Assembly (NCBI RefSeq): GCF_031769215.1
Contig: NW_026782092.1
Span: 558,001-622,000 of the forward strand
Direction of reading: 5' to 3'
DNA length: 64,000 nt
From: Ylistrum balloti
Lineage: Eukaryota
Below are positions 1-32,011 of the stretch, in pieces (position 1 is the stretch's first letter; each line of letters opens with the position of its first letter). A program made the translations under genes and the position numbers. Under the pieces are notes generated by a model. It was not told where the DNA came from. It searched no databases and saw only the letters and a program-made list of their open reading frames with translations.

Positions 1-808
1 TAGTCATATTTAGATATTTCTTTATAAAGATTCTCTTCTGTAGCACCAAACTGAAAACGGGAAGGGACGTCTCTGCTATTAAGTTTGCCACTAATGACAT
101 CTTTCATTTCCCATTTTAAAAGTCTTCTCAATAAGATCATTGATTCATCAAAACGCTCAACCAACATAACAAGATCAAGCTCTGTATTCAATTGCTGTAG
201 AAAGTTCTGGAATTTGTTTTTATCATATTTAGACATAAGCAGTTTCACCGGGTATCCGAAATCACGAGACTGACCATTAACGTATCGATATGACGGCAAC
301 ATTAAGCGAGATTTGTAGAGTTTTTCTGAAAGAAGGGTTCGCACAGGATTGGTTCCTGGAATGCTAAGTACTTCTTTCTTGTTAAAATAAACTATACTTG
401 ATGCAAATTGTTGAAAAGGTTGTCGTACGATTGCTATATAAATGGAATCATTCCAAACAAGCTTTTCAAATATCGTTCTGTTGTAGGAAGAATGAACAGA
501 CATGATATCAAACCTCGTTTGACCGGGTGGTGGTGGATAGAATTTGTCTGGTGTTACTAGTGTGGTTGGACCAAGTCCGGACCCAAGTTTGGGCTGAGCA
601 AATGTCAGATTGTAACGATAGCCGTATCGATAGAAGATGTTTTGGACACTCGTACTGGCTGCCTTGTGAACCTTAAGAAAGGTCACATGGTGTGCGGGAA
701 AATCTTTTTGCTTCATTTTTGCTTGTTTTTCTGTCTTCCCATTCTTTGGCCAACTGATAAACTGAGGAGAGCTGTCTCCGTGCGTTTCTTGTTTTTCATG
801 CCAAAAAC
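1..808 (-). CDS. Galactose-3-O-sulfotransferase (GAL3ST/galactosylceramide sulfotransferase family), main catalytic exon; 3' end runs off the window; N-terminal exon(s) not securely located
   Basis: Missed by the ORF track because there is no stop inside the window. Acceptor ttttcag at 810/809. Manual translation is open to position 1: FWHEKQ...HHVTFLKVHKAASTSVQNIFYRYG (matches the GAL3ST 5'-PSB motif FLKxHKxxSxT...N.F.R.G)...YIAIVRQPFQQFASS...LDLVMLVERFDESMILLRRLLKW...SKYD. Confidence 0.85.
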
Positions 809-3800: not shown

Positions 3801-5689
3801 AACATAAAATCATTCAATTGTGACCTTTCATAAGAATTGCGGAAAACATTACTCAGGCATATTTCGAATATACAATAAAGATGTAGCTGAAGGGTTTTCT
3901 ATTATCTTAATCATTGTGGTATATATATGAGTGATTTATTTGTTTACTGTAAGTATATATCTATAAATATATATAATGTACATTTGTTCACAAACTTTAC
4001 TTGTAACGGAAATTGCACTAATTGTTTACGATAGTTAAATAATGTAGCATTGTAACACTAAACTCGAAATCGTCAGAAGACGTATGTGAAAGGTATCATA
4101 TTATGAGAAATATAAAATTAAGAAAGATGAAAATTAAAACAATTAAAATATTCAGTAAATCAAGAAACGAGCAAATGCTGTAACGGAAGCAAGTACATTA
4201 TATCAAAAGTGTTTTAAGTCGTGCCCTAGCGAAGAGCAATCCATATCTATTTCTGAAACCAATTAAGTTTTCTTGTAATTATTTTTGAAAGAAGTGTATT
4301 ATTTCTATTGTCATATTATATGTATAGACATGTTTTACTATAACACATAACTGTTTAATGTATCACTTGTTGTACAGGAGTGAAAGTTGTTTGTAATCGG
4401 AGTCGATTTCTTTATGAACGTCATCGTAAACACGATTACTTCAAAAGTTGTACATATATATAAATATCTATTTCTATTTTTTCGGATTAACAATTTGATA
4501 AAGGTTAAGTAATGTTATTGGTATTAGATAGATGTTATATATGGAATATTCGTTTGCTCGTCAATGAAAAAACAAATTCATATAAATTTAGATATTCGTC
4601 TTTACTTACTATTACGTATGAAGAGCCAAGCTGCTACGGTATATAAAAACTGCATCATCAAAGCAAGACTCGTTCCCGAAATCTACAGTAACCAAGATGT
4701 CAGTAACCATTTTTTTAATTGATGTAGTTTAATATTTCCATACTTATATTATGATTTTATCAGTATGTCTTTCAATGACACCGTTTGAAATTAACCTTTA
4801 TACAATGCTTATTTGCTGACGTTCCCAATCTATTAATTTGTTTAAGAATGATATCTTTGTCATTTCTTCCCAAACATTTAGGTTTCAAATATCAGTATAA
4901 TCATTTGAACAATTACACTTTCTTCGTCATTTGTAAAATCCTTGAAATCATTTTATGGTACATTATATCATGATGTTTGTATCAGCTCCGAGCAAATAAA
5001 AATTATACCGGTCATTAAACTTCTGCTGTAGTAAACACCACTGTGTCCAGTCGTGTCGACTGGGTCTTTCTGTATACGTTTGGACATCGATGTATTTCAC
5101 AATGTATGTTCGTAATTGATTATAATCATTTAAGCCGTGAGCAATTCCGATAAACTGTTCATATATCAAAATTTAAAAAAAAAAAAAAAAAATAGATGTC
5201 TTACCAGTATGACTTCGGGAATAAAAATATGAACAGTTCGGGTTATAATTTCATCTTTCAAACCATGATTAGAATACAATAACATATTACAATGAATAAA
5301 AATCGTCGTTATTGCAGTGCGTAATGGGATATTTGAAAGTTTTCTTAAATAATTGACCTGGTTAAGATGCAAAGGTACGTATTACGTATATGACGTTAGT
5401 TTCCGGCCTTCGTCATTTGGTGATTGCTTCAAGAATATTAAAAAAAACAGACAAATCGGCAAAAGGTCATATGTGTAATGACTGTGTTTATGGTACATTA
5501 CAAGATAGCTCGAAGAGAACAAAACAAAATGAAAATAAAATACATTTACATAGAAAATTAACTGTATATTAATGTTGTTAGGAAAATAAACCTGCATCAG
5601 ATTGATCTATTTACGTGGAAACGTATGTAAAATAACCCACGTTCTGTCCTTTTCATTCATCCACTTCACACCTGACTACCACCGATGTT

Positions 5690-7563
5690 TTAAGATGGTG
5701 GGTTAATGTCGTATCCAAATAAAAGAAAATCCATTTTATACAATTCCTGGATTTTTGTTATTATTCGTTTCGGGATGTTCTCGTACGCCTTGACCAAAGA
5801 TTGCCTCCGTTGCATCCTTCGCTCTGTACTTGATAAAGGGTTCGTGTTCATTGCCACGAGAACAGCTTTTGTGACACTTTCAACATTTACACTGTTATTG
5901 TCGTTGAATTTCAATAAAGGAAATGGAACGTTGGTTCTTATATAACCTTGTATTTTCAATGCTTCCCATATCTTCATTAAATACGCGACTTTGTTTTTAC
6001 AATGTTGTCGCATCCATTTCCAATCAAACAATGATAAATAGGTCTTTATCACACCTTGTAACATCTCTCTTGTACCAGGTCCATTCATTTCAGTTACCAG
6101 TTTATTCTTCATTTCATCACTGATGTTCAGCCTGTTTATGATATGTTCCATATCTCGATTGAGTGTCTCTTGTTGAATTATGATATCATAATCTACGTCA
6201 CAAACGCGGCATGAGTAATACACGGGGCACCAGTGTTGATTTATAATCTTATTCTGAAATGCATCAGTAACTATTCTATCTAACCAATCTTCAAATGTTA
6301 TATTAAAGCCGCATTTACCAGCCATTGTCATGTAATCTCCTTTACCGAAAAAATGCGCAGAAACCTGATATAACATTTGGTGTTTTAGTAGGAAATATTT
6401 GTCTATGAATGCCGAAAACAATCTTGAGTACGGATCACGAGAAACGACAATGTTTGTTGTCATAAAAGACTCCGGGTTATGCTGTTGGATCGTCGCTACA
6501 ATTTTGTGTATGTCTGACCTTCTTATCTTAAATGCTTCTTCAACTTGCAGATTCTTCTCCAGAATTAAGGCCAAAATCGACAAAAATGTACAGCCAGATT
6601 TCGCTACTTTACAGATTGTCAAATTACATTTCGTTACGCGGATGAAGTTAAATTTGTCTGGTTTATATAGATTACTTGTCATGTTTTCTTTTACTGCACA
6701 TCCTTTCTGTAGGTGTGTTATTCGTTCATTAAAGACATCCTTTACCGAATAATTCCTTGTCAAATACTTAGGTTCTAAAGATTGAAAACTCCAAGCTGAA
6801 ATAAAAGAATTGTTTCAATTGAAGATATAACTAGATATATACATTGAAATAACTTTGATTTCGTAAAGAAATCCCACATACGTAAATTTGTGTTCTCATA
6901 TTTTCCAGGAATTTTCATCACTGGCTTTCAAAAAGTCATCACCTTTGATGTTATCATAAATACGATTTAAACTGACTGTGTTTCGCTTCATCTCTCATGA
7001 AAATACTTCAATATAAATTCGATTGAGTATTTTCCTATGTTAAGATAAATCCAAGAAATATATGCTTCCTTGATTTAAAATCAAATGATATTTATAGCAA
7101 AGCATAACAAATTTAATAGTAAAGCAAAATTCTTTTGTTCGAAATCATTTTTCATTATGGTCACAAAATCTTATAGATTTAAACCATGGTTCCCATTATA
7201 GACCGATCCGTCGCGACCTACTGTTAATAAAAGTGCATATTTAGATAGTGGAGCGAGGTCATTTTAAACACGTTTACACTTACCACGCCTATTCTCATCA
7301 GCACATGTCCGATAGCGTTTTACATTAAACCTATGTACATTCTGATGTGTAGTTAAATCATATTAGTTTTAAATCTAGAGAAGAAATAAGTTAGCGCGAT
7401 ATAAATGTTTGTCGAATTAATAGTTGTTCATACTCCGGTTCAGTTCTCGATAAAAAAAGCATTTGCAATATGTTCACAATTTTGGAAACGTTTTATAATC
7501 CTTTGCGTTTTCATGTATGTAAATGTTTGATGTTTGGTGTTTTGAACGTTGTATACGCTGTAT

Positions 7564-7635
<72 letters not shown>

Positions 7636-7772
7636 TTATACTTACTTGTTGAATAGAGGAATCCAGGTACTTGACTGTATATAGACAGAGCCACAATAAA
7701 ACACATTAACACAATACGTCTACAATACCTCAGCATTGTCTTATTGAACGGTCTGTACCATTTACAATTCAT
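5690..7772 (-). CDS. Carbohydrate sulfotransferase, Sulfotransfer_2 (CHST11/HNK-1ST-like) family, type II membrane protein
   Basis: Join 7736 (or upstream ATG 7772)..7646 with 6795..5690. Exon 1 is MLRYCRRIVLMCFIVALSIYSQVPGFLYST (basic residues then a TM anchor) with donor a|gtaagt. Acceptor tttcag is phase-matched, giving 398 aa from 7736. Motifs: CKVAKSGCT (5'-PSB), SRDPYSRLFSAFIDK (3'-PB), HWCPVYYSCRVCDVDYD, YKMDFLLFGY. Confidence 0.9.
7568..7633. repeat. (AG)n microsatellite, about 33 units, in the CHST intron just past the donor
   Basis: Directly visible perfect dinucleotide run. Confidence 0.98.
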
Positions 7773-8443
7773 CTAATGCTATGAAATATTCAGTTACATC
7801 TTCATGATTGTTTTAATTACAAATGTCGACGAACTTCACTACATACAGTTTTTGCTATACGTCCAGAAATATTTCATTTACAAAAAAAATGCATCAAGCG
7901 ACACAATGTCTTCCAAACATCACTAAGAATAGACCGATGCTTGGAGCTGTTTCAGTATTTCTCGAAGTTTAAAGAACATGTAATACAGCGAATCAGATAT
8001 TCCTAGCTGATACGTCTTCCATTATACTAAGGAAATGTATGTTTCTGTCTCTTTAATATACATTGTACAAAGAACCGCAATAAACATAAAAGCCATCTAG
8101 ATGTGTGTTCAGTTTTGTGACTGGAAGCGGTAGTTAATAACATGGTTATATGGTTTCTATTTTATCACATTAACACCATCTACTTATTTTAACATATATT
8201 TTTACTGGGGAAAGTTGTAAAGATAAACGTCCGCTGGGAATATGGACATATTTCGAATAACTTCAAAGTTGTGGCTGGAAGTGATTGTCACTAATGTAGA
8301 TATATGGGTTTATTATGTTAAAATCATTCCCTCATGTGATATATACTTTGATCAGCTGTTTTTCTTTTTCAAATAGGTCAATAACTGAACGATATAATAA
8401 CAATGTTTCATTACCATTCATGTGTGTAATCACTCTTAACATG

Positions 8444-15500: not shown

Positions 15501-18500
15501 TAACTCACACCAAGTGAAGAAACTCACCACTCCAAGTTTAATTGCGAGTCAAATCATTTCTGTATTGAGAGAGTGTCAAGAGTTATGCTGCTAAAATATA
15601 TACACGAGACCTGTGTGCCTTGATGCTCACCTGAGTTATGATAAGTGATTTTGTTGATACTACCTTACATTATAATAATCTAATATCAATTCCTTGAGAA
15701 AAGTTGATTTTTTTTGTTCTCCTATTTCTTGTCTTTTTGTTTAGTGTTATACTATTAAACATCCATCAAACTACAATCATAATTTGAACAAAGTTGAATT
15801 TGATACCCTGCCAAAAAATAAACCTAAAAAGTGAGAATGGCTCATGTACAGAATATTTCATTACATCCCTCTCTAGAGGAATTAAAACTCAAAAATTCAC
15901 AAAATATTTCAGAGTACTTGAGGACCTATCATACAGGAAAGAATTTCACTGTATTTATCTAAAGCCCACAAATAATTTCCTTTCTTCAGTTTTGCAGAAT
16001 CGTCAATTCAAAAACATTGATTTAAATGTAGATCACAAATAAGCCTCGGTAAATCTTGTACTAAACTTTTACACTAGGGGAGGGGGCTCATTTGAGGATC
16101 CATATTGTATTTCATAAAATGAATGCCTTTATAAGACTTTTGAAATTTAAGCCAATTTGACCACTTTTGCTCATGACACTCGTCCTAAACTTTTAAAAAA
16201 TAGGTTCAGAGGTTCAGTGATATGAGGACGGACAAAAAGAGATCATGATAGATCCCAGGAGACTTCATCTCGAGTGACCTACAAAGGTAAAGCAGATTCA
16301 AGTTGTTTCCATTTCCAGAGAATTTTAGTTCTAAAGATACCGTAGGGTACACATTTAAACTTCTTTTGGGAAATGTCAGGTGTTATTCATTAAGATGTCA
16401 TGCAGTATGTAAAATATTGGGGAATTTTCCAGAAAACTCGCCTTGAACAGGAGCTACAGAACCACTTTTGATTGCTGAAATGTGGAGAAGTTCAAAACCA
16501 TATTTTTAATTAGTGTTGAAAAATTGTTTTGATAAATTGATTACATCTAGTGATAAATCTACCTTCATGCTGAGGGCAAGTATCATTACAGAATGAAACA
16601 ACTAACAGCTCGTATTCAACATAATTTCATCAGTGTTAACTTCAATCACTGTCATTTGTGTTAATATCCAATACCAGAAAATTTCATCCATCACATTTAT
16701 AAAATGATACATATAAGCAGAAACAGATTTAAACTTTTACCGATAACATTTCAAAAACAAATCACACTATTTCCTAACAACAGGATACATTTATAATCAT
16801 GATATCACACATAATGATATTTTTTAATTACAATGGAAGTTGTGAAGGGAATCAATATATAACTTCCTTGGTGACATTTTCTTCAAATTTGATACTTTTT
16901 TTTCCCCAAGAACACTGTTGAAGCTACAAAACTATATTAAAAAAACATTCTGACATATGAACAACATTTCCTATTAAGGCAACGAATTTATGATTACAAA
17001 AAATAATCAGACATGTGAAACAGGACAATTAGTTATATCAGGTATTTTTCTGAGGTCCTTTCGAGGGCCAATAATGGATCCCATTCCAATCTGAACTGGT
17101 CTTAATCTCTGAATTTCCCAAACATAGCTAACTCTTGAAAACTTGCTTCCTGAAAGGTTGCTTCCCTAAACAAGACAACTGCCTCATTCTACATCCATGG
17201 AAAAACCCCTTAGGATACAATATAGCAGTAAGGCATTGTAATCAGGAAATTATTGGACCGTCAACAACAGGTAAACTAAGATATAATATTGGAATTGTTG
17301 AAACCTAAAATCTAAGGATGTCTTTTTGCAGCAACACAGCAAAGAAGGAATACAGATCCATTTTCTATTGAGTACGTATAATGATAAAAAACAATGTAAT
17401 GAATATACCAGAAGCGAGTTCTTAAAAACTGATCTGAGTGATTTTTTGGATTAGCAATTTACTCCAATCGAAGCCTGGTTGTTATGTTGATAAGAATTTA
17501 ATATATATATCTTGATAAAAGTGGCTATGAAGGGAAGTTACTTGAATTTCTACAAATTCTCTGACACTTACTCTGTTTGCCAAAGAAGAGATTTCCCTGT
17601 TTGAGGTCCATAATCCTCTCATTGTTGTCAACAAGTGAGGAGACTTTCTCTGAGAGTTGGAGTGCCAGGGACTGGAGACGTGTTGGTTCTGTACGATGCA
17701 TCACAACTGTCTGTGTAGGCTCATCCAGGGAGGCCTGTAAATGAGGATTTATGCATGTAATAATATACTACAGATATCAAAAACTCAGTAAAATGGGTGG
17801 TCTGATGGCACAATTGTCACCCATTCACCTTTCACCTAGATGTCCAGGTGTTTCCCTGAACAGAAAAGAAAAGAGGTAACCTATCCGACCACACAGGTAT
17901 TTCCCCAGGTTCTTCAGTTTCTTCTGAAAGTAAGTCCCTAGTGTGCTTCCATCTCAGCCAACAAGAGTGATTGGTATTCATCATCTCCATGTCTATGCTG
18001 CTTTATTTTACAAATGTATGAATTCTGCCAAAAACTTGAACAGTGCCAAAATTCCCTACATAAAAAAAAGGATAACATGTGACATTTGACCCCTTGACCT
18101 TGACTGAAAACCACCTAAATCAAAACAGGAGTAGAACCTGATGGCGTGAATATGATTAAATCTGATCCAAGGTTAAAGTGATTACTTGGGCTATTATAAG
18201 AACAGTCATAATTCTCTCAACATTATCACATTTATATTCTCACTACTAACCATTAGTTCCTCGTTGAGGATCATTTTGCTGATGATGGAGTGAACAACAG
18301 AGCGTTCTAGCTCAAACATGTTGGCCAATGTGACAAGACTGAGAGAATCGTACACACTGCTGTACGTAAACAGGTAGGTACGCAGGCTTTCTTTTTGAAT
18401 CTTTGTGGTGATCATCTCCTGAACATTCAATGGCTTAAAGAACAGATCCCAAACCTACAACAAAGTTACTGTGGTGTTAACATATCTGGATAATTTCATG

Positions 18501-21500
18501 ACAATCACAACACAGACACAAGAAATTCTATTTTTTCACACTTCTACAATTTATATTGGTCAGGGCTAACTGAATTTAATCAAATTATCATAATTAACAA
18601 TAATAATAAACAAAAGAATTACAAACTTCGATAACGTGTTCTTTATTTCATTTACATTAACATTTTTTCATTATGCGAGTCTAAAAGATTATCCAAGTCA
18701 CACAAACCATCACAGGCTATGCGAAGATCCTACAAATATCACAAGCTAACAAGACAATGCTCTCAGCAGTATCTGACCTTAAATATCCCACACTCCTCGA
18801 CATACTTTCTCCCCTACCTTAGTGCTCATCTTCTCGTTGATGATGTAGTTTTTGCACTCTTTCCAATTACCAGTCTTCATTGCCTTGGAGGCAGCAACAA
18901 CATGCTCTCGCATACTCTCTGGTGGTCCTGTCAGTGTCTGTCGCTCACTCATCCGTAACACATGATGGAAATTCTTACTAATCATACGACGGCGTGCATC
19001 CATTTCATGAGCTGTTAACATGTTGACAACATAAAATAGAACTTATCTTCAAAGCGTTATCTACGTTATGCAAATGATTTGTATGAGAAAGAAAGAGTCA
19101 ACCTTTTAATTGTGGCATAATAAAGTAAATCTTACTAACATTTTTGTTCAAGGTGAAGGAGAAAACAATTTATTTAGTATTAATAATGCTATGTGTGTGA
19201 TATAATCAAACATCAACATCATCACCCTTTACAATCAATATCTGAACCATCCTTCTGATTCAACCCATGAACTTTTGACCTTGTCATCACCTTTCTGAAA
19301 CTGTCTGTCGATCTATACAGGTTGAGAATTAAAAGAAAAACCATTCGACCTTATAAGGCTTTGGCATACAAGCCATTGGGGAGATGCAATTAACTACTTT
19401 TAAAGTACAAATCTTGTTCTTAAAGCTTCTGTACATACCTGCCATGTATGGAATCTCCATAAGCATGGCGGACACCAAGTATACACACTCTAACTGTTCC
19501 AGGTTAATGTGCATGTGATAAGGTAATAGACGTCGCTTCTCAATCTTCTCCTGTTCGGGTGTTCTCTCATGTTGTCTTTGTAATAATAAACCCTAGAGAC
19601 AATAAAACCAAACAGTATAAAATAATACCCCATTTTTAAAAATGGAAATGAAGAATTGCCAAATGGTTGTTGTTACTACAGAACTTCAGGAATTTACATG
19701 ACACTTTTGTTTATTTTCCTTACCTGTGACAGTTGTCACATGACATAGCAAGAACTGGGGTATACATATTTACTTGGTAAGTTTTGAAATCCTATTCAAA
19801 CTAATATGAAATTAAGAGTTTTTGATGGAGGAGGGGGGAGGGGTTTCAAAAGTTTCCTGATAAAAAGGTCGAAGATGCTTCATATACCACTATCTTACTT
19901 TCAAGACACCAAAAATCTTGTCTTTGAGCACACAGGGCCCGCTTCATCAGTGATCAGAAGTAATGAAGTTTGACAGCATTTCAGAAAAAATTGATTGATA
20001 GAATCAACTAAACTGCCATCTTACTTGTGCCAGGAGCTCCTTGGCACGGCCTCCACTCTGGATATCGACTAGAGCATTATGGGCATCACGAGTCCTTCCT
20101 TGTCTAAAGGCACACAGACCAAGCTGTACCATAGTCCTGTTGTATAAAATCTGTGGAAGATCAAACGAAAATATGTTTAAATTCACTGGGGTTTAAGTTT
20201 TGCATTTGTGTTGATTGTGGCCAATTCAATGGGTCAAATTTTGTGATACTCCACCTTCAGAAAACATATCTTTACAAAGGTACAGAAGTATACATACTTA
20301 TAATATACTTTGTTTTTTTATCTATCAGAGATTTTGATTCATTGTGAACAATTTCTGCTGGACTTTGATTGAATGCTATCTCCAATGTCAGTGAATACTG
20401 GAAAATTCCATCTTCTGTGAATATGTCAAACTATACACATGATCAGCAATAATTAACTGGTTTTTAAATCAATTACCTTTTTCACTTTCAAAGCAATGAG
20501 GAAATCAGTAACTTCATAATTTGTTTTGTTTAAAGATGAATTATAGTATTTGTTTGCACTTATCACTTCTACTGTACATCTTCGTATAAGCTGTGTAAAA
20601 TAAGAAGCATTTGACCTAGAGCCCTTAGCTCAGAACTTCTCACAAACTATGCCAGCACCATAACTATCATGGGTTTAAGTGAATGACTTACAACAGGATC
20701 TTTTTACTTTCACATATGACCTCTAACCTCTTGATGTACAATAAAATTTTAACTTTGTCATGAAATGACTTCTGACCTGTGTTGGAACATCAGAGTGATG
20801 GATGTTGTCCTGGAGATGAGACATGAGCATGAGGTCGCGGGCCTCGTACCAGCGGTCATGAAGAGCGTGGTGGTATATCTGACACAGCATGGCTCGTGTC
20901 CTCAAACGATCAGTATTATCCTTGGCATAAATATATTTACAGAGGTCTCCCATTAGGATCTTACTTGTGTCCACTCCCTGTGAAGAAAAAGGGAAAGATT
21001 AGAATTTGTCGTCAAAAGTTCTCAACTCCGTGCAAATTTGTTTCACACTACAACACAAAAATTAGTACTACAAGTACAAGCAATACTTAATTGCCAACAT
21101 CGTATTTGTTTCACTAGAAAATTAATGAATAATTATAAAGAACCTGAATCAATATTACACTTTTACATCTGGCAATAAGTCCAAAGAAAGAACAGAGGAT
21201 GGGCTTATTACAGGCCAATGAACAACATTTGTTAGTCATTCTAAGGTTTAAGGATGGACTTATATACCAGGCATGGTCTTATTGTCAGACAAATCTGATG
21301 ACCTAGACTTTTGACAGAAGACCAGAGTGTCAATCCGAGAGCAAACATCTTCAAAGAATGAAGTTTGAATGCCATCAGTCTACAATCTGGTATCTAAATG
21401 TAATAATGTTACAAGACTAGTAGTATTTATAAAGGCAATAAAAATAAATGTTTAAGAGACACATCACATTATGTTGTGATATTCAAATAGAAACTCAGTA

Positions 21501-24500
21501 AGGTGAAACAAATTTCCAGTTCCTACTCTATTCACCATCATCATGAATCATATACTTACATCAAATCCTTCGTCAAAGATGGTACGATCAAACTGTAAAA
21601 TGAAGATTGAAAAGTTACACATAGTTCATATCTAATGAATAACATTTTGGATGATTGTGTGAACAAGCACGTATACATGTTTCTCTATTTTTCTATTCTC
21701 ATTACAACATTTATTTTCAACCAAAGAAAGTTGTGTTGAATATATTACTGTAATACAGATGAATGTTATTACTTGTTTTAAATCACACAATGAAGCCCTG
21801 TAAATAACTATGGAATAGACCATTATGGGTCTTAGGAAAGATGGACAGTCATCTCGTACAACCAAACAGTGATATATACTAGGCTGACTTCTGCCCCGTA
21901 AGTCTGAGTCTATAAACCACTGACCTGAGGTCAGATTTTCTTAGCCAGGAGACTTACCTTATAGTATGTATGTTCCACCCTGCGGAGGTAAATACGGCAT
22001 AACTCCGAAGACGTGGCTCGACATGGTTCCCCTGGTGCAGATCGGTACTCAAGATACTCTTGTAACTGCTCAAGGATGTCACACATGATTGATTCGTCCT
22101 TCAATCTACAAATAGAGTTGTCTTTTATCACATCCATCCAACACAAATCATTAAAGAATGGTACAAACAAGAGCCCATTAAAACACTAAAAAACACCACT
22201 GCTTTTCAATTCTGTGGTTGAAATATTGCGTATGTGGTACAGTACAAAATGAAAATAAAAAAAAATCACCAAATCCTAAAAACGACAAAACTTGAAACTA
22301 AAATACATATTTATATTCAACACCATCAGTATCCCTGGCCTGACCCTTGACCCCTGCCTGTTTTGGCCTAAACTTTGACCTATACCAGTCCAGAACTGAT
22401 CTTTGACTCCTACCTGTCAACATATTCTGTACTGTGAGCATCACAAGCCTGTAACATCTTGGTAAATTCTTCATCCAGCCTCTCCACTAAGGTCAGAATA
22501 CAGCCTCGCACGCGGTATGGTGAGACCTGTCAAAAATAACCACCCTAGATATTATATAATATACTGTGTTATTGACTACTTCAAAATAATCATTGCTTAG
22601 AAGTGCATGTATCAATTAAGTACAAATGGTTTGAAACAGATGTCAAATCAGTGACAAACAACTTTACTTAGATTACAATGGAATCACTTACTGTATATAA
22701 ATAGCTGTTGAGTTGACTAGACTTTTACAATTATAATATAAATCAAATCGTTTAAATTGTCCATTGTCATTTTTTGCCTATTATCAAATGCAACTTCTTG
22801 ATAAATTTATTTCATTCTTCACTCATTACTTAACAAAAGATTGATACAAACTGAGTATTTAAGTAAATATTGGACATTTTCCAAGATAAATTATATCTGA
22901 ATATCTTTACTAAAACACTAAAATAAGTTAATGAACAGATCACTCACATCCAGTATTTCACTCTCCTCCAAAATATTATCACCAATAGTGATGTCTCGAT
23001 TCTCAACTAAGACACCCAGTAATTTTTTGATGAAGGTAAGACACCTATAAAACAAAAAAACATGTTAAGGATATATGCTACTTTCCAAAAGTGGGCCACA
23101 TCATGTATATAACAAAACATCTGCAAATCTTCTATAAATGGTATGAATTTGGTATCAAAAAGCAAATTTAACACTCGACTAAAAGCAACAGATTTTAGGG
23201 GTAATGAAAAACAACTTAGACAAATAGTTCCACTGATACAGTATACTAAAGTAAACCTAGGGCTCCAAACTTAGAGGTTGTGTTATTCTTAATTCTGTAA
23301 AACAGCAGATAAAAATGGATAGGATTATATTTATTATCATACATGGGTTTATTGCCAAATAAAATTGGGAAAAGTGAATGTTAGTAGAATGTGTTAAAAT
23401 TTCAGTGTGATATACATACACTTCCCACATCTCTGTTCTCATACAGGTAGCAATATTAGGGTTGTAGTCATAAATGGCTGCCAGGATATGAAACATGATC
23501 TTTACGCTGATTGCTGGTCCTAGACTTTTACCATCAGCAATGGTCATTAGCTCCTTCAGCAACTCAATCTGTTCACTTCGGTCTGTTCCCTTTTTACCTC
23601 GGGCAGCAATGATTTCTGCCAGTTTTTTAACAACGGCCTCATGTGTGATATCTGCTTCCTTAGCGAACATAACAGTCTTTTCCTAAAACGAATCAAAATT
23701 GAAACAATAATGAATAATTTAAATTTAAATATAAACAATGGATGATTTAAAAAAAAGTTTTTTTTCCAAAAATTTTGTTAAGTTCTACAATAGCACTGTC
23801 TTTCACTTTTTTAAAAATTAACTCCCAAGTTTAGAAAACATTGGTTCTGGTAACTTATTCAAGATACAAGATATTAAGAAGTTTCAATACTTGTACTATT
23901 TAAAATCTTGACTTGAATATTTTGACAAAATAGCAAAGTAGAAAACATACAAAAAACTAAAACCTGATTCATATTTACTGTTTGACTATACATTTTGAAA
24001 TAAGTAGCTCCTTAAATTCACCTAAAATATCGTTATCTATCTGGTGGAACACAGAAATCAATGTTAGTGAATCAGAGTACTCTCTTCTTGACTGAAACTT
24101 GGGCTCAGCCAAACAAGAGTTGTTTATGCAGTAAGGTCAGATCTACTTATTTTATTTGCTTTCTGGTGAGCTTCAACTTAGCCTTTCAAGGCCTGTATTG
24201 ATATTTGAAGATCAATTTTGACTTATGCATAAAATGTTACATTTCAGGTGCAAATGAACTGATTTGTTGGCATAAACAAACAGACCCCAATGCTGGCACT
24301 GGACTTGACACATTTAAAACATATCACATCTGAGAAATTTCTCCTGTCAAATTTTCTCACTTAAAAGTTTATTTCATGGAGGGCAAAAAATTTACAGGTG
24401 TTTTCATATCTGTTTTCTTCACATCTTTAATTTAGGAAGCCTGGTTGGTGTATGTATGTGACAGAAGATCTCTGAAAAAATGTTTCAATTACAATTTTTT

Positions 24501-27500
24501 TTTAGGATAAACAAAAGAGAATTACAAGTATTTTGTCAAACACAGATACGAATAGAGATTCACAGAAGAGCATATCAACTGAACAACTGAGCAAAATTAA
24601 CATGGATACAACAAAGACATACCTTAACTGCAGAATAGGCGGGCTTCTTAACAGGTTGCCATTTGGGTCGAGATTCTTTCTTTGTCGCTCTGTCCTTCTT
24701 TCCTTCTTTCTTTGGACCTTCCTCTCCAGGTTTCCTAAAAAACAAATAAACTGTTTCTTGACACATCTAGTCTTGTAAACATTTCCAGTAAATTTCTGTT
24801 AAAAAAATATTCAAATCCTGTGTCTATTTATGTAAATTTAAACAATCTACTTTACAATGTCTTTCCTTTACAAGAAACCCTCATTAAAATACAAAAGAAC
24901 TACCAAACAATACACAGAGGACCTTACACTCACGTCCATGTACTAAGGAATTTATAACTATATTCCATGCGTTTACAAACCTTAAGCCAAGTAACTCATT
25001 ACATTATTTAACTCAGACAGTGAGTTGCTCATTACCAAGGCAATCATGCAACATCGTAAAGATTGAATTATTCATGATGTAACAATAGTGTTATTACATA
25101 GAAATGATGACAAGGTTTTATGACATGACACAACTAACAACTTAACAGCATAGACCTTGAACCCCCAACATAAATGTGGAAGGCTAGTGATAATGAGTCA
25201 AATGCCTTTACCATTTGGCCATCATGGCCCTCTTTATGTTTCACTTATAATCATCAAGAAGGGATGTAGAATGATGTTTTGTTTCAATAAGAGATTTATT
25301 CTTAACACTACAACTTGGTGATATTATATTGGAAATTTTGTCTCTTTCATAACCTGCAGTGGCTACAAAAATGATTTTGCATTGTATCATGCAAGTATAG
25401 GTATGAAAAAATACCAACTGAAAATAAAGTGCATTTCTTACTTTTTCAAGAACATAGCAAGAGTATAACCTCCAGGCCCCACTTCCATTTCATCATCTGA
25501 TGATGATGAGTCTGTTTCCGAAGAGCTCCAGTCACTAAGGTCATCATCGTCAATATCATCACCCTTCAAATACAGAACCAGAAGTACAATACCTTGAAAC
25601 AATTAAATCCCATAACAACCACTTTCACAAGAAGTCATTTACAATTTTGAGATTTGTTTTAAACATATATGACTAATAAAGATGTATATATCTACCAAGT
25701 CATGTCAACAGAAAATTCACATGATTTAAAACCACATTTGTTTCAAATTCAAATGTTTAAAGAATTTATTAAAAAAAAACCCAATCAACAGGACTGAAAA
25801 GCCTCTTTCATTATGCATAAATATACAAACCTCACACTGTATAAAGCCGAACATTTCATCTTAATTTGTATAAGTATACTGACTTTTTAATTGAAAGTAA
25901 GTGGGCATGCATTGACCAAAGTAAACTGTAAGAGACGGATTGATACACACATCTATTTTTCCCTGAAAAGTTGGCCATAAAAATGTGCAATTTCAGAAAA
26001 TAGCAGCTGAAAATCATAGACTGAAAAATTCCAATAATGGAGAAGTTAACTGATTTTGAAATGTACTGCTACACTTGGCGACAACTTTCCATCTGTTGAT
26101 AGCTAAGACAATAATAAAAAAGATTTGTTTGAAGGGGACTGACTACATCTGGTACAGAAACAACAGTGTAGCTAATTATCCTCCAGTTTACTGTCAGCAC
26201 AAATCTACAACCCTTCATCTAACAATAGAAAAAGGATATCTTATATCTGTGCCAGATCACTCTGCATTGGTAAGAGGGGGATTACAGACTTATCATTACA
26301 GGTATATTGCAATGTACATGTGTGTTTTTCAAAATACTGGTTCAAATATCAATTCAATTTTAAAATACAATGTACAAACAACATAATTAAACTGCTATGT
26401 ACATGTGTGTATCTCAAACTACTAGTTTAAATCTCAAACTACTAGTTTCAATTAATTTTAAAATACAATGTACAATTTATGTAATTATACCTCAATATAC
26501 AAAAAATATAATTATACCCTTGTGTATCTCAAAATACTTGCTTGATCTTCATTATAATTAAACCTATTTTATATTTCTGTAGTCATTTACCTATCAATAG
26601 GAACTTTACAGTACAAAGTATCACAACATTCCTAAATGTTAGGATTTTCCTTAAACTTAAAATATCCAAGAAGGAAATATCAAACTGTTCCAGTAAAAAT
26701 GTCCTTTACCCAGATATTTTCCTTCACACTAATAATACTTTCCTATGGACAAACTTTGGTCAGAGACTTTCTATATGTAACTTAAGGATTTTTAACTAAT
26801 TGGGCAAAAGATATTTAAGTAAGATTTTAAATGGAATACACACAAGATTTTCTTGAATACACTTAGCCTGAAAAATGGAAGTGAAGACAACTACAAAAAC
26901 TGTTTGAAGGGGACTGACTACATCTGGTACAGAAACAACAGTGTAGCTAATTATCCTCCAGTTTACTGTCAGCACAAATCTACAACCCTTTATCTAACAA
27001 CAGAGAAAGGATATCTTATATCTGTGCCAAATTACCCTGGTAACTTAAGGCCATTAGTACTAAACAACTTAGAGACAGTAAAGGTATACCCAGACCCCAA
27101 GAAACCTTCCCTCAAAAGTCCCTTCAACAGCATGTAAACAAGATTTTTTTTTCAAAACAACACAGGTCTGTTTATTTTTGTCCATATTGAATTTGAGAAA
27201 GATATGTTCACATTCCGAGTATTTCAATATCTACCAAATATGTACAAATTTGTAATGGAGAATCCTGTGTCATGTAGATTGTATTAAATCTTCACAATAT
27301 ATGTACAGAAAATATCAAATTGTACAACTAAAGATTTCCTTAACCATGATATTCTTTTCATTACACACAAAAATCTTTTCCTAAGGACAAACTTCAGCCA
27401 AGGACTTTTTCTAGGTAACTTTAGGATTGTTAACGGAGTTGGGCAAGAGAAACCTTAATGAAATTTTTAATGGAATATACAAAAGACTTTTGTAGTTACA

Positions 27501-30500
27501 CTAAATCTGAAAAGTGGCAGTGACAGCAACTCCAGAAACTGTTAGAAGGGGACTGACTACATCTGGTACAGAAACAACAGTGTAGCTAAATATCCTTCAG
27601 TTTACTGTCAGCACAAATCTACAACCCTTTATCTAATAGTAGAAAAAGGATACTTAATATCTGTGCCAAATTCTTTGATGTTTACAATATTTGCTTTAAT
27701 ACATCTTAAACTTCACAGACAACACTAAAGGTAAATTTTTGACACAAGAGTCTTGATCAATAGTCAATCAAAACTTCTAAAAAAATTAATAAAAGCAAAA
27801 AACATGAAGCAAACATATATTAGATCAAATAAAGTATCATTATCGAAAAAATTGGACCCATCTTACACTTCAGATAACAGAAAAAGAATTATGTATTTAT
27901 AACTATAGAAATTGCACAAAAATTGAAAACTATTATTGGTTTGAAATTGAGACCAGCTCTTCCAGATGATGGCCCACACTACCATCTTCAATAGTGAAAG
28001 CTGATACTATTTCCACTTGATTCACAGAAAATTTTGTTGGTTCCAGTTCTCGACTCAGATAAAATAAAAAGTAATTGACAGTGAAAAAGGCCTGTACATA
28101 CCTCTTGTCTCTGATAGGCAGGTACAGAATCCTGTACAACAGGAGCTGGGGCTATTTCCTCTGTGTCCACTTCTTTCTCTTCAACTACAAATACAGGAAA
28201 TCAGATCATTTGAACACCATGATGGAATTGATTCTGGACTTTTAACATGAAATTTAAAACTTTAAAAACTGTATTTTTCGGCCTATAAACCGCAACCGAG
28301 TATCAGACGCAGAGCTGGATTTTAGTGATTTTTTTTATTTGATCTGCAAATGAGATGCACTGTAATATACACTGCTCCTTCTCTTATGATGTGCTAACCA
28401 TTATGTTGACCAAAATTTGTTGATGTAACGGAAGCCAATTTATCAAGATTGTCAGTGAAACATTTAACGTAAGTTTGCAAATAAACAGATAATTCTTTAT
28501 TTCATAGACATGTTTCAAAAACATGAAATAGCAATTATCAAACTAAAAATTTTGTCTTAGCCACTGGACTTGTTGTTTACAGATAATCTGCATAATCATA
28601 ATGCAATGTCACATAAAAAATGTCATGAACTGGTCTCCTAATAAAATTTGACTTTTTACAAGAACTCTGAACCCTACGAAGATCAACTTAAACTTTTTAC
28701 TATTTCCCTTTCAATTAAAAAGCTAAAAGCTTTTAGATGTATCAAATTCATTAAAAATAGCAGTGAATGAATTATATCAAGGTGTAAGGTGCTTTACCAA
28801 ATATATTGATATACAGAAAGTTACTCTGACAACATTCAGAAACAAGTGACAACAATTACATGTGATAACATATTGTACACAATTTTTTACCTTTTTCTTC
28901 ATCATCTTCATCGCCCTCATCTGGGTGCTATAAAAGACAATTTTGTTCAATAACTATTTGTACAAATGCAGGTGAAATGGGTTGTCAGAAGGAGCTTTAT
29001 ATTTCTTGAAATCTTTTATATGTATCGAAATCATACAATTTTCGACAAAATTAATGTGTCACTCTTTCCAGTTCATAAATCATATTTTCTATGCCAGCTC
29101 TAAATACATTCTTACATAAGACTTTTTCACAAACACTAGAATAAATATTATAACAAAAAACACTTTTCAGTAATATCAAATTTTACTAACAAAGCTAGCA
29201 ACCTACCTCTTTATAGCTGCTGATTTGCTCCTCAAAGTCACGATTATACTTGCGGAGCTTCTGCCGAAGTGTGGTCAAACCCTTGGCATTGTTCTTACTC
29301 ATCTGTTTCCTACCCTCTCGGTCCTCCCAGCACTGAAAGTTATCACAACAATATAGTATACTGCCTGTAGGCTTTATAAAATTACACTACCATCCAAACT
29401 TTTTACCAATTATTTTGACTTATTTATGTAAGCTTATAAGATAATTGAAAGAAATGTAATTTCTTGAAAATATTTCATATGTTAGTGAGAGTTACAAATT
29501 ATTTCAACATAATTAGCCTCCTTGAAATAACAGAGGGATTCATTTTCTAAATGTTGAAACATGTACAAGAAAATTTTTTCAATTTTGTTGCATACAAAAC
29601 TGCACTGAAATGAGAGATTTTCAACAGGATCTTTGTCTGTGAAAAATATCCTCAAATATCAAATTTTCAGAAACTATACTTAAAATATTGGTCTAAGACT
29701 AAACACTATGAAGATGTATATGAACATCAGTGTATGTAAGCATACTATTATGAAAGTACTTGCTGTTACTTGTATCTGAAAGATTACCTCATTAACAAAG
29801 TCTTCTAACTCAGACAGACATCGAATATAGAACCGTGGACTTCCGCCCTCCTTATCAACCACCTTCTTTGCTTTATCATAGGCACGGCCTAAGTCTTCAA
29901 AGCCTGAAATACAAAGCAGCCATGCATTGTCACTTACTGTCTACAGGTACTGATTTTATGAAACTAAGCATACTATTACAGAACAAAAGCAAAATTTTCT
30001 AAGAGAATATCACTTCACAAAGAGACAATTCTAATACATATGAGTAAGTAGTAATATCCTCTTTTTTCACACTATTTCCTTACCAGTATGACCAGTATTT
30101 TTCTAAACTGAGATAAAAATGTCATTAAAATGTTTGTGAGATTAATCTGCTCCTTGTGTTAAAAGCTTGAATGTTTCAAGAATGATGTTTGAGCATTAAT
30201 GAAAAATGAGAAAATACAAAAAAAAACCAAAATGACCTCACGCAATTGTCTTTGTTTTTCTTAAGATGTTGCCAAACTTTTTACAGTAATTCCAAACAAC
30301 TGCATAATAATTAACGAACAATTTTGATGTCACTCACCTGACAAGACTTTGGACATGTCCTTGATCTTTTTGTGGTTTCCTATTAGCTTAATGATCTTTC
30401 GCAGTTCCTCATACCTGTAAAGTATTCACAGAAACATTGATATCAACTGAAACAAACATAAGCTTGAAAAATAATGTGATATTCTAAATTAATATATATC

Positions 30501-31536
30501 ATAATATATCATAAATGCAGACTTTCGCAGATGATGATTTTTTCTTTTTGTTTACCACTTTCTTCTTTTAACTTTTCAATTACAAGTTTTAAAAAGGGGA
30601 TTGAGTCTGGGATTTCATCCATTGGGAATCATTATACAATGCAAAAATAAATATCAACATATTGAAAATAATAAAGCATTCTTTTATGAATGGTCTATTT
30701 ATATAAAGCACCAAAAAATGGTTGAAATTCACTATTTTCAATTAATATTGGCCTTTTTCAACACTACTTTAGGCTCCATTTCTTTTGCAATTCCTTTCCT
30801 GCGATAATCTGCATACAAGCTCTTTCCATGTCCTTGGGGTTTAAGGCCATATGTCATTTAAGTTCTGAGACATGGATGACCCTACTTCTAAAACAGCTCA
30901 TGCAAACACTGTTATAAATTCAAGATGTTGAATAATCATGTTAAATACAGGCAGTTGAGTCCTGGAATCATACTTTGCAGGACACAATCAAACCCACTGT
31001 ATAAAATGTTCGAATGAGATATACCACTTTGGTGTAAGTATATGTGTAAAGGAAGCATACCTTTTGTCTTTAGCACTGCGAACTACTCGAGTCTGTTCCT
31101 CTTCATCATCACTCAACTGGAAAGCACTAGAACCAACAGAAAACAGGATTTAATTTCAATACTTCTATCTATTCCTATCAATTTCTCACAACACAGTAAC
31201 GCTCTGTCATCTGTGCTTCTAACAATAGCTACTCATTATTTGATACTTATTTACATATGTTACACTCAGCTTCCTATACATCTTCCTCTTTTTTTTAACC
31301 TTTTGCCTTTTTGAAGAATTCCAAATACCATTTAAAATTTTTAAATCTTGTTCTCTCAAATCTTATAATGTAGTATTTTATTCTGATTTTTTCTTTAAGT
31401 TAACTGTATGTTATATTAAAACCAAGACTTACGCTGGCCGCATAGGCCTGTCTTTCTGTGGTGCAAATGTTGGTTCATCACTATCGCTGGAACTGTCAGA
31501 CTCAGAGTCTGATCCTCGGAAGAAACGTCCCGCCAT
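12594..31536 (-). CDS. EIF3C: Eukaryotic translation initiation factor 3 subunit C (PCI domain), 22 coding exons, 938 aa
   Basis: Exons (all GT-AG, phase-consistent, total 2817 nt): 31536-31433, 31126-31061, 30414-30338, 29903-29788, 29332-29207, 28927-28891, 28184-28102, 25563-25442, 24734-24623, 23682-23420, 23044-22948, 22526-22414, 22105-21958, 21592-21560, 20977-20777, 20150-20025, 19592-19439, 19011-18818, 18454-18251, 17734-17572, 13803-13561, 12628-12594. Matches remembered eIF3c segments: [110 protein letters not shown]. Confidence 0.96.
25148..25230 (-). mobile_element. Degenerate tRNA-derived SINE-like relic in an eIF3c intron
   Basis: Minus strand reads gatggccaaatggtaaaggcatttgactc...ggttcaaggtc, resembling pol III A and B boxes. 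No intact cloverleaf. Confidence 0.4.
26123..26254 (-). ncRNA. Candidate box H/ACA snoRNA, copy 1 of 3 (eIF3c intron 7, sense)
   Basis: Hairpin 1 has lower stem ggcacagat/atttgtgct and upper stem tccttt/gaaggg. H box ACAGTA (26194-26189). Hairpin 2 has stem gctaca/tgtagt. ACA box (26128-26126) is 3 nt from the end. Length 132 nt. Confidence 0.8.
26898..27029 (-). ncRNA. Candidate box H/ACA snoRNA, copy 2 of 3
   Basis: Same 132-nt hairpin-ACAGTA-hairpin-ACA layout. Differences from copy 1 are mostly in the apical part of hairpin 1 and after the ACA box. Confidence 0.8.
27537..27668 (-). ncRNA. Candidate box H/ACA snoRNA, copy 3 of 3
   Basis: Same 132-nt layout with both boxes intact. More diverged, with one change in the hairpin-2 5' guide (TAATTA to TATTTA). 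Confidence 0.75.
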
Positions 31537-32011
31537 GATTATTCAGATTTCTATTAAATCATCAAAGTGACATTCATTAGAACAGCAAAGAAATTTCTTT
31601 TATTTTGACGGTATTACATCACAAAATTTGTTTTAATTTTTTGAAAACACTGATCTGAATTAAAGAAATAGCGGGTGATTCTTGGATTATATCAGTTTTA
31701 TCTTGGTTAAAGCAGTATTAGTGTATGGCAAATGATGAACTTTCCATCAATATAAGTGTCATCAAAGTCAAACGGCATTAATCTATTACAGAATTTACAA
31801 CATTTATACTCCATCCCCCACCCCTTTCATCCCCTCTCCTACCTTCATTGTTCTCATAATTAGTGAATTACCTCCTTACAAATACATGGAACTGAAACTT
31901 ACATTCATAGCCACAGATTTCATTTGTTACTAACAGAAAATTACTAACCACCGGGTAATTGCGTCAAAATCAAGCATATTGCAACAGAAACATACCATCC
32001 AATGCATAGTA

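What the first reader, a model, noticed from the sequence alone, without database searches (positions are those of the whole stretch)
26123..27668. Three 132-nt box H/ACA snoRNA copies in one eIF3c intron, predicted to guide a 28S rRNA pseudouridine
Seen in sequence: three copies of identical length on the eIF3c sense strand, each hairpin-ACAGTA-hairpin-ACA+3 nt. The surrounding duplicated DNA (26640-26897 vs 27330-27536) is recognisably homologous but far more diverged than the cores, which points to purifying selection on the RNA. Inference: the hairpin-2 pocket has 5' guide UAAUUA and 3' guide CAGUC, about 14 nt from the ACA box. It pairs exactly with the conserved LSU rRNA segment GACUG-UU-UAAUUA and leaves the first U in the pocket. 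From memory this is human 28S psi3616 (old numbering), the SNORA6/ACA6 target, hosted by a different gene in human. Copy 3 has one guide mismatch. I found no target for the hairpin-1 pocket (AUAAGAUA / UUGUAG). Several snoRNAs in a single intron departs from the usual vertebrate one-per-intron layout.
Basis: partly seen in the sequence, partly recalled or inferred. Interest (0 to 1): 0.75.

Follow-up and report, generated by a model that had tools for sequence, protein, structure and literature searches.

The report
Triplicated SNORA19-like snoRNA in eIF3c intron
One intron of a (reportedly scallop) eIF3c gene carries three copies of a small box H/ACA guide RNA whose second pocket matches that of vertebrate SNORA19, so it should direct one conserved pseudouridine in 28S rRNA; it looks genuine but is an ordinary new member of a known family in a known layout.

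Summary
Three 132-nt units lie on the minus (eIF3c sense) strand at 26123-26254, 26898-27029 and 27537-27668. Each folds as hairpin-ACAGUA-hairpin-ACA+3 nt. They are the only copies in the 648-Mb genome, so this is not a dispersed repeat. All three sit in one inferred GT..AG intron (25564-28101).

The best Rfam match is SNORA19 (50/45.7/40 bits, below the gathering score of 80). The hairpin-2 pocket (UAAUUA / CAGUC) is identical to the SNORA19 consensus. It pairs 6+5, Watson-Crick only, with this genome's 28S.

- This 28S reads GACUG-UC-UAAUUA, not UUU. The change is at the unpaired pocket neighbour and does not affect pairing.
- The target is the ACA19/SNORA19 site (human psi3618, chicken 28S-3128). 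It is not the ACA6/SNORA6 site psi3616, which lies two nucleotides upstream.

The vertebrate host of SNORA19 is EIF3A; here the host is eIF3c. Hairpin 1 differs from SNORA19 and has only a weak 6+3 candidate target in 28S. Copy 3 has changes in both guide pockets and may be decaying.

Several H/ACA snoRNAs in one intron are known from Drosophila and rice. Earlier unchecked notes of this scan report the same layout elsewhere in this genome. I found no RNA data, so expression and the pseudouridine remain untested.

The parts
26123..26254 (-). Copy 1 of the H/ACA snoRNA (132 nt). H box ACAGUA at 26189-26194; ACA box at 26126-26128. Hairpin-2 5' guide UAAUUA at 26173-26178 and 3' guide CAGUC at 26137-26141.
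   Evidence: SNORA19 50 bits, E = 8.3e-7. Fold -37 kcal/mol, z = -2.9. 5+6 Watson-Crick match to own 28S.
26898..27029 (-). Copy 2 of the H/ACA snoRNA. Both guide pockets are identical to copy 1. The two changes in the hairpin-1 upper stem keep pairing.
   Evidence: SNORA19 45.7 bits; fold; pair counts; same 28S match.
27537..27668 (-). Copy 3. Boxes and stems are kept. The hairpin-2 5' guide reads UAUUUA (one mismatch), the hairpin-1 5' guide reads AUUAAGU instead of AUAAGAU, and the terminal pair of the hairpin-2 lower stem is broken. Probably weakened or decaying.
   Evidence: SNORA19 40 bits; alignment; no 28S U2433 hit at the threshold.
25564..28101 (-). Inferred eIF3c intron (GT..AG, phase 0, 2538 nt) that contains all three copies.
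   Evidence: Donor GAG|gtatgt and acceptor tttgaag|GGT read. Both flanking ORF pieces are in one frame. No RNA evidence.
28102..28184 (-). Inferred upstream eIF3c exon (acidic linker, ..[27 protein letters not shown]).
   Evidence: ORF piece and splice signals. Not confirmed by alignment, because the linker is low-complexity.
25442..25563 (-). Inferred downstream eIF3c exon ([40 protein letters not shown].).
   Evidence: ORF piece and splice signals.
17558..31542 (-). Host gene eIF3c, as far as mapped.
   Evidence: Collinear tblastn hits of eIF3c proteins. Names 'EIF3C-like [Mya arenaria]' and 'Eukaryotic translation initiation factor 3 subunit C'. PF05470 eIF-3c_N on homologous exons.
26635..26897 (-). 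Non-coding flank 3' of copy 2, duplicated with 27274-27536 (3' of copy 3) at about 69% identity.

Best explanation
These are three tandem paralogues of one intron-encoded box H/ACA pseudouridylation guide snoRNA. They would be processed from the eIF3c pre-mRNA intron and assembled with the dyskerin/Cbf5 complex.

The 3' hairpin pocket (5' strand UAAUUA, 3' strand CAGUC, about 14 nt from the ACA box) pairs with 28S rRNA 5'-GACUG-[U C]-UAAUUA-3'. It presents the first U after GACUG for isomerisation. This is the site guided by the 3' hairpin of vertebrate SNORA19/ACA19 (human psi3618 in the old numbering, chicken 28S-3128; plant snoR87).

Copies 1 and 2 are fully competent by sequence. Copy 3 carries changes in both pockets and is probably weakened. 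The 5' hairpin does not carry the SNORA19 5' pocket. Its best candidate is 28S AUCUAC-[U A]-UCU, 212 nt downstream, which by distance is the chicken 28S-3340 / E2 site. That assignment is weak.

Shown here: sequence, fold, boxes, complementarity, copy number and intron position. Inferred: expression, processing and the pseudouridine itself.
For: - Architecture and boxes.
- Similarity to SNORA19: Rfam E = 8e-7 to 1e-4 in the local search and 6.4e-5 genome-wide. The lower stem of hairpin 1 (GCAC/GUGC) and the whole hairpin-2 pocket match the consensus.
- Target: own 28S holds GACUGUCUAAUUA once. The 5+6 Watson-Crick match is the best in 18S/5.8S/28S, and only 0.8% of shuffled guides reach it.
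- Family assignment: the chicken ACA19 homologues use a 6+5 nt 3'-hairpin guide for 28S-3128 (PMC2653536).
- Not a repeat family: only three copies in 648 Mb.
- Position: sense strand of one eIF3c intron.
- Conservation: the core is far better kept than the flanks. Three of four stem substitutions keep pairing.
Against: - There is no expression evidence. The only public run that holds the stretch is a DNA-like contig set covering exons and introns alike.
- All three copies score below Rfam's gathering threshold (80 bits), and the window has no match at gathering level.
- With three near-identical paralogues there is no compensatory covariation.
- No orthologue turned up in the eIF3c loci of two other, unidentified invertebrates (L014, L015).
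- The 97% core identity of copies 1 and 2 without any flank homology may reflect gene conversion or core-only copying rather than selection.
Confidence: 0.8

Rival explanations
1. The units are non-functional relics: snoRNA pseudogenes or retroposed or segmentally duplicated copies that still look intact. The 28S site would be guided by another snoRNA or not modified at all.
For: No RNA evidence. Copy 3 has mutations in both guide pockets. Copies 1 and 2 share no flank homology, as expected for core-only copying. Scores are below Rfam's gathering threshold.
Against: These are the only copies in the genome, so there is no separate 'master' gene. Copies 1 and 2 keep both boxes, all stems and a perfect 11-bp guide. 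They lie in the sense strand of a highly expressed type of host gene, as working intronic snoRNAs do.
Confidence: 0.1
2. One reading: an ACA6/SNORA6 equivalent that guides the psi3616-equivalent U.
For: The target region is the same helix. Position 3616 is attributed to SNORA6 (PMC8759569).
Against: The pocket leaves the U after GACUG unpaired, not the U inside GACUG. In chicken the ACA6 site (3126) uses a 5' hairpin, 5+6 nt, in an RPSA intron, and lies 2 nt upstream of the ACA19 site (3128; 3' hairpin, 6+5 nt). Rfam's best match is SNORA19, with the identical pocket, and no SNORA6 match appears at E <= 10.
Confidence: 0.03
3. The RNA's main target is not rRNA. It could be an snRNA or mRNA reached through hairpin 1, or the RNA could be an orphan or regulatory snoRNA. 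The 28S match would then be a retained but secondary feature.
For: Hairpin 1 has no convincing rRNA target. When G-U pairs are allowed, shuffled guides find about 5 sites each. The chicken EIF3A-hosted relative GGgACA37 pairs its 5' pocket with U6-86.
Against: The hairpin-2 pocket is perfectly kept between vertebrate SNORA19 and scallop copies 1 and 2. The hairpin-1 5' guide is free to change in copy 3. I did not scan snRNAs.
Confidence: 0.07

Closest known systems
SNORA19 / ACA19 (Rfam RF00413); chicken GGgACA17 and GGgACA37
   Same: Same overall length (131-132 nt) and box H/ACA architecture. The 3'-hairpin pocket UAAUUA/CAGUC is identical (6+5 nt) and so is the predicted 28S target (chicken 28S-3128, human psi3618). 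The hairpin-1 lower stem is similar (GCAC/GUGC). The host is a gene for a core eIF3 subunit. Chicken also has two snoRNAs for this site.
   Different: Scores are 40-50 bits against a gathering score of 80. The 5' pocket is unrelated to the SNORA19 5' pocket (28S-3709 / 18S-863 sites). The host is eIF3c, not EIF3A. Three copies lie in one intron, rather than one per intron.
SNORA6 / ACA6 (yeast snR3 function)
   Same: Acts on the same 28S segment. Its target is only two nucleotides away.
   Different: It guides the U inside GACUG (human 3616, chicken 3126) from a 5' hairpin, and is hosted in RPSA. No sequence match was found here.
[quoted passage not shown]
   Same: Several snoRNA copies (isoforms) lie inside a single intron of a protein-coding host (PMC2780460; Huang et al. 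2004 J Mol Biol, cited).
   Different: A different phylum (mollusc). The processing route was not examined here.
E2 / SNORA62 function (chicken GGgACA40, 28S-3340)
   Same: The candidate hairpin-1 target lies 212 nt 3' of the hairpin-2 target. That equals 3340-3128 in chicken.
   Different: Only 6+3 base pairs, with an extra unpaired U.U at the top of the pocket. 4.6% of shuffled guides do as well. No sequence similarity to E2 was detected.

Membership tests
Box H/ACA pseudouridylation guide snoRNA (class) | Hairpin - H box (ANANNA) - hairpin - ACA located 3 nt from the 3' end | tested here: met
   ACAGUA hinge and ACA+3 nt in all three copies. MFE and centroid folds give the two hairpins.
Box H/ACA pseudouridylation guide snoRNA (class) | Internal pocket whose two strands pair with a target on both sides of an unpaired U-N, about 14-16 nt upstream of the H or ACA box | tested here: met
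   Hairpin 2: CAGUC and UAAUUA pair with GACUG-UC-UAAUUA of own 28S. There are 13 nt between the upper stem and ACA. Copy 3 has one mismatch.
Box H/ACA pseudouridylation guide snoRNA (class) | Stable RNA of about 130 nt is expressed, and a pseudouridine is present at the target | not testable with these tools
   The single run found holds DNA-like contigs only. No modification data.
SNORA19 (RF00413) | Score at or above Rfam's gathering threshold (80 bits) | tested here: not met
   50, 45.7 and 40 bits.
SNORA19 (RF00413) | 3'-hairpin guide for the 28S site 2 nt 3' of the ACA6 site (6+5 nt) | tested here: met
   The pocket is identical to the model consensus. Chicken table. Match to own 28S.
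SNORA19 (RF00413) | 5'-hairpin guide for the 28S-3709 / 18S-863 equivalents | tested here: not met
   The 5' pocket strands differ from the consensus. Scans of own rRNA give no hit at GAAAUUCAAUCAAG or AAAAAUUAGAGUGUU.
SNORA19 (RF00413) | Hosted in an EIF3A intron | tested here: not met
   The host is eIF3c. Human and chicken hosts are EIF3A / EIF3S10.
SNORA6 / ACA6 | Guides the U inside GACUG (human 3616, chicken 3126) | tested here: not met
   The pocket geometry places the U after GACUG in the pocket. No Rfam match.
Intronic snoRNA gene cluster (Drosophila / rice type) | Two or more snoRNAs on the sense strand within one intron | tested here: met
   Three copies lie between the inferred donor at 28101 and acceptor at 25564, and no coding-like ORF lies between the copies. 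The splice sites are inferred, not confirmed by RNA.

The most novel reading that the evidence does not exclude
The scallop RNA is a mosaic guide. It combines the SNORA19 3' pocket (psi3618 equivalent) with a 5' pocket for the E2/SNORA62 site (psi3830 equivalent). This 28S guide would then have been tied to genes of eIF3 core subunits since before the protostome-deuterostome split, moving between eIF3a and eIF3c. That would be an example of pocket reshuffling and host hopping within one functional gene set.
Probability: 0.15. Interest if true: 0.4.

Novelty: new member of a known kind. Interest (0 to 1): 0.25.

Why it matters
It adds a molluscan functional homologue of SNORA19/snoR87 and predicts a conserved pseudouridine in 28S. 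It also corrects the human counterpart to SNORA19/psi3618 rather than SNORA6/psi3616. The guide pocket has stayed letter-for-letter the same between vertebrates and a bivalve, while the other pocket, the host gene and the copy number changed. That makes it a modest data point for how snoRNA guides and hosts evolve. Otherwise it is routine annotation.

Tried and rejected
- **Rfam at gathering level:** no match on the whole window. The SNORA19 and SNORA30 matches appear only in E-value mode.
- **Dispersed-repeat idea:** rejected. A DNA search, RF00413 and my own covariance model R1 all find only this locus. The one exception is a weak 34-bit hit at G000:C182:708150-708274, which folds poorly, has a poor H box and lies antisense to coiled-coil-like ORFs.
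- **Expression:** the single run found (X1) holds DNA-like contigs spanning intron and exon. It shows no joints and gives no RNA evidence. It covers all three copies at 94-98% likeness, but most differences inside the cores were not listed.
- **Orthologues:** an eIF3c exon searched against the protein representatives gave mostly short fragments.
  - The Mya arenaria protein has no locus on record.
  - Two usable genomic loci of unidentified invertebrates (L014, L015) hold no SNORA19-like unit by Rfam, by R1 or by a pocket regular expression.
  - Four further contigs were too short to be useful.
- **Hairpin-1 target:** with G-U pairs allowed, the hits are no better than for shuffled guides. The Watson-Crick-only 6+3 hit is marginal.
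- **Not done:** I did not scan snRNAs. I did not locate the scallop eIF3a gene. I did not scan the metagenome collection, because a pocket pattern general enough to be useful would also match vertebrate SNORA19 and could pull in human contaminant contigs. The two rRNA family searches in the own genome failed technically, so I took the rDNA by coordinates instead.
Full report
**What is in the sequence**

The region 26123-27668 holds three direct repeats with a sharply bounded 132-nt core. The cores lie at 26123-26254, 26898-27029 and 27537-27668.

The functional reading is on the minus strand. There each copy reads 5' hairpin, ACAGUA, 3' hairpin, ACA, then 3 nt. ViennaRNA recovers exactly this two-hairpin shape for all three copies. 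The energies are -37, -35.8 and -34.7 kcal/mol, with z-scores of -2.9, -1.9 and -2.2 against shuffles.

**Conservation of core versus flanks**

- Copies 1 and 2 differ at 4 aligned core positions, plus the 3' tail.
- Copy 3 differs from copy 2 at 10 positions.
- Units 2 and 3 share about 260 nt of duplicated 3' flank at 69% identity, against 92% in the core (Fisher p = 3e-8).
- Units 1 and 2 share 97% in the core and nothing recognisable outside it (38%, random level).

However, 97% core identity without any flank homology is better explained by gene conversion or core-limited copying on top of constraint than by purifying selection alone.

With only three near-identical sequences there are no compensatory double changes. 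Three one-sided changes keep pairing (G-U to A-U type). One terminal pair is lost in copy 3.

**Not a repeat family**

A BLAST-type search of the whole 648-Mb assembly finds only these three places. So does a covariance model (R1) built from the copies.

Rfam's SNORA19 model adds one weak place, G000:C182:708150-708274 (34 bits, genome-wide E = 0.2). It resembles the 5' half of SNORA19. But it folds no better than shuffles, has a poor H box and lies antisense to the local coiled-coil-like ORFs. I treat it as probable chance.

**Host gene and intron**

The minus strand from about 31542 to 17558 encodes eIF3c.
- eIF3c proteins align collinearly, exon by exon.
- The nearest named relative is 'EIF3C-like protein [Mya arenaria]', at 74% identity over the aligned exons.
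- Homologous exons carry PF05470, eIF-3c_N.

The copies lie between two short exons of the acidic linker.
- Upstream exon, 28102-28184: ends ...CAAGAG|gtatgt.
- Downstream exon, 25442-25563: begins tttgaag|GGTGATGAT.
- This gives a phase-0 GT..AG intron of 2538 nt, 25564-28101.

The linker is low-complexity and does not align, so the splice sites are inferred. If the upstream exon were not real, the intron would simply be longer. No coding-like ORF lies between the copies, so 'one intron' is robust.

I did not test that beyond the bivalve affinity of eIF3c.

**Family**

Rfam gives no match at gathering level. In E-value mode the best family for all three copies is SNORA19 (RF00413):
- 50, 45.7 and 40 bits against a gathering score of 80.
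- E = 8e-7 to 1e-4 locally, and 6.4e-5 for the best copy genome-wide.

The alignment shows where the similarity lies: the hairpin-1 lower stem (GCAC/GUGC), the H and ACA boxes, and the whole lower part of hairpin 2. In hairpin 2 the pocket strands UAAUUA and CAGUC are letter-for-letter those of the consensus. The hairpin-1 pocket is unrelated to the consensus.

**Target of hairpin 2**

I took an rDNA unit from the same assembly (G000:C1244) and delimited 18S, 5.8S and 28S with Rfam.

The 28S reads ...CCGACUGUCUAAUUAAAACAAAGC..., and so do all four rDNA hits in the genome. The difference (C for U) is at the second, unpaired pocket position. CAGUC pairs with GACUG, UAAUUA pairs with UAAUUA, and the first U after GACUG is left in the pocket.

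This 5+6 Watson-Crick match is the best hit in the three rRNAs. Only 0.8% of shuffled guides reach it. Copy 3 (UAUUUA) keeps only 5+3 contiguous pairs.

**Which known site this is**

The chicken snoRNA catalogue (PMC2653536) lists:
- 28S-3128 with a '6+5 nt (3')' guide. Its mammalian homologue is ACA19 and its plant homologue is snoR87. It is carried by two snoRNAs in EIF3S10 (= EIF3A) introns 8 and 9.
- 28S-3126, '5+6 nt (5')', for ACA6/snR3, in an RPSA intron.

PMC8759569 gives human position 3616 to SNORA6 and places SNORA19 in EIF3A.

A 6+5 guide made of UAAUUA and CAGUC can only present the U directly after GACUG. The ACA6 site, two nucleotides upstream, is then the U inside GACUG.

**Hairpin 1**

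The pocket strands are AUAAGAU(A) and (U)UGUAG, 15 nt from the H box.
- It does not match the SNORA19 5'-pocket targets, the 28S-3709 and 18S-863 equivalents.
- With G-U pairs allowed, its hits are no better than for shuffled guides (about 5 sites per shuffle).
- With Watson-Crick pairs only there is a single 6+3 hit, 28S AUCUAC-[UA]-UCU within CCCUAUCUACUAUCUAGCGAAACC. Only 4.6% of shuffled guides obtain such a hit.
- After removing the insertions and duplications in this rDNA copy, the site lies 212 nt 3' of the hairpin-2 target. That equals 3340-3128 in chicken, where 28S-3340 is the E2 site.

This coincidence is suggestive but weak. One arm has only 3 bp, there is an extra U.U at the top of the pocket, and the equivalence rests on distance alone. 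Copy 3 has lost this arm.

**How it most likely works**

This part is inferred from established knowledge of H/ACA snoRNPs.
- The eIF3c pre-mRNA intron is the precursor.
- Each unit is bound co-transcriptionally by the dyskerin/Nop10/Nhp2/Naf1 set and trimmed to about 132 nt.
- With three units in one intron, endonucleolytic separation or alternative protection is needed, as assumed for the Drosophila and rice intronic clusters.
- Copies 1 and 2 then guide isomerisation of the 28S U. Copy 3 is probably less efficient or inactive.

**What is missing**

There is no RNA evidence. The only public run that holds the stretch (X1) consists of DNA-like contigs running through exon and intron, at 94-98% likeness and without joints.

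Two eIF3c loci from unidentified invertebrates (L014, L015) contain no such unit by Rfam, by R1 or by a pocket pattern. L015 instead has a SNORA58-like candidate inside its eIF3c gene. Other contigs I fetched were too short.

**Novelty**

Several H/ACA snoRNAs in one intron is the 'intronic gene cluster' described for rice and Drosophila (PMC2780460; Huang et al. 2004, cited). Earlier unchecked notes of this scan report three-copy and six-copy H/ACA arrays in other introns of this same genome.

The finding is therefore a genuine-looking but ordinary new member of a known kind. Its main value is correct annotation. A smaller point of evolutionary interest is that a guide pocket is conserved from vertebrates to a bivalve while the partner pocket, host gene and copy number have changed.

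Noticed in passing
L008 (G000:C1244:35000-44999), 28S at 4178-8210; also L004-L007 and L009: The 28S copies in this assembly are interrupted downstream of the snoRNA target. The distance from GACTG|T to CTAC|TATCTAGCGAAACC is 271, 489, 530 or 1298 nt in different copies. In L008 there is a 59-nt tandem duplication, then about 140 nt of non-rRNA sequence, then a repeat of 28S resuming at ..AAAAU|AGCCAAAUGCC. From memory, that is where R2-type retrotransposons insert. This could be variably 5'-truncated insertions or assembly artefacts.
   Followed up: partly
L011 = G000:C182:706650-709774, hit at 1501-1625 (+): A weak SNORA19 hit (34 bits) through the 5' hairpin. Its pocket fits 18S AAAAA-UU-AGAGUGUU (5+8), which is the kind of site attributed to SNORA19/SNORA24 in vertebrates. 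But the fold is poor (z = -0.1), the H box is poor, and it lies antisense to neighbouring coiled-coil-like ORFs.
   Followed up: partly
L015 (ENA ERZ21930236 ctg45214l), 15644-15786 (+) and 500-629 (-): In an unidentified invertebrate, the eIF3c gene contains a SNORA58-like H/ACA candidate on the sense strand (24.8 bits). A better paralogue (43.1 bits) lies 10 kb upstream on the other strand. eIF3c may host a different snoRNA there.
   Followed up: no
window 27637 (copy 3, RNA position 32): The related DNA run X1 differs from the window by T>C here, in the apical loop of hairpin 1. It is the only listed difference inside the part of copy 3 covered by that contig.
   Followed up: no
window 26303-26552: Short AT-rich direct repeats (about 50-nt units, 60-82% alike) lie between copy 1 and copy 2. 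They look like plain intronic low-complexity repeats.
   Followed up: no
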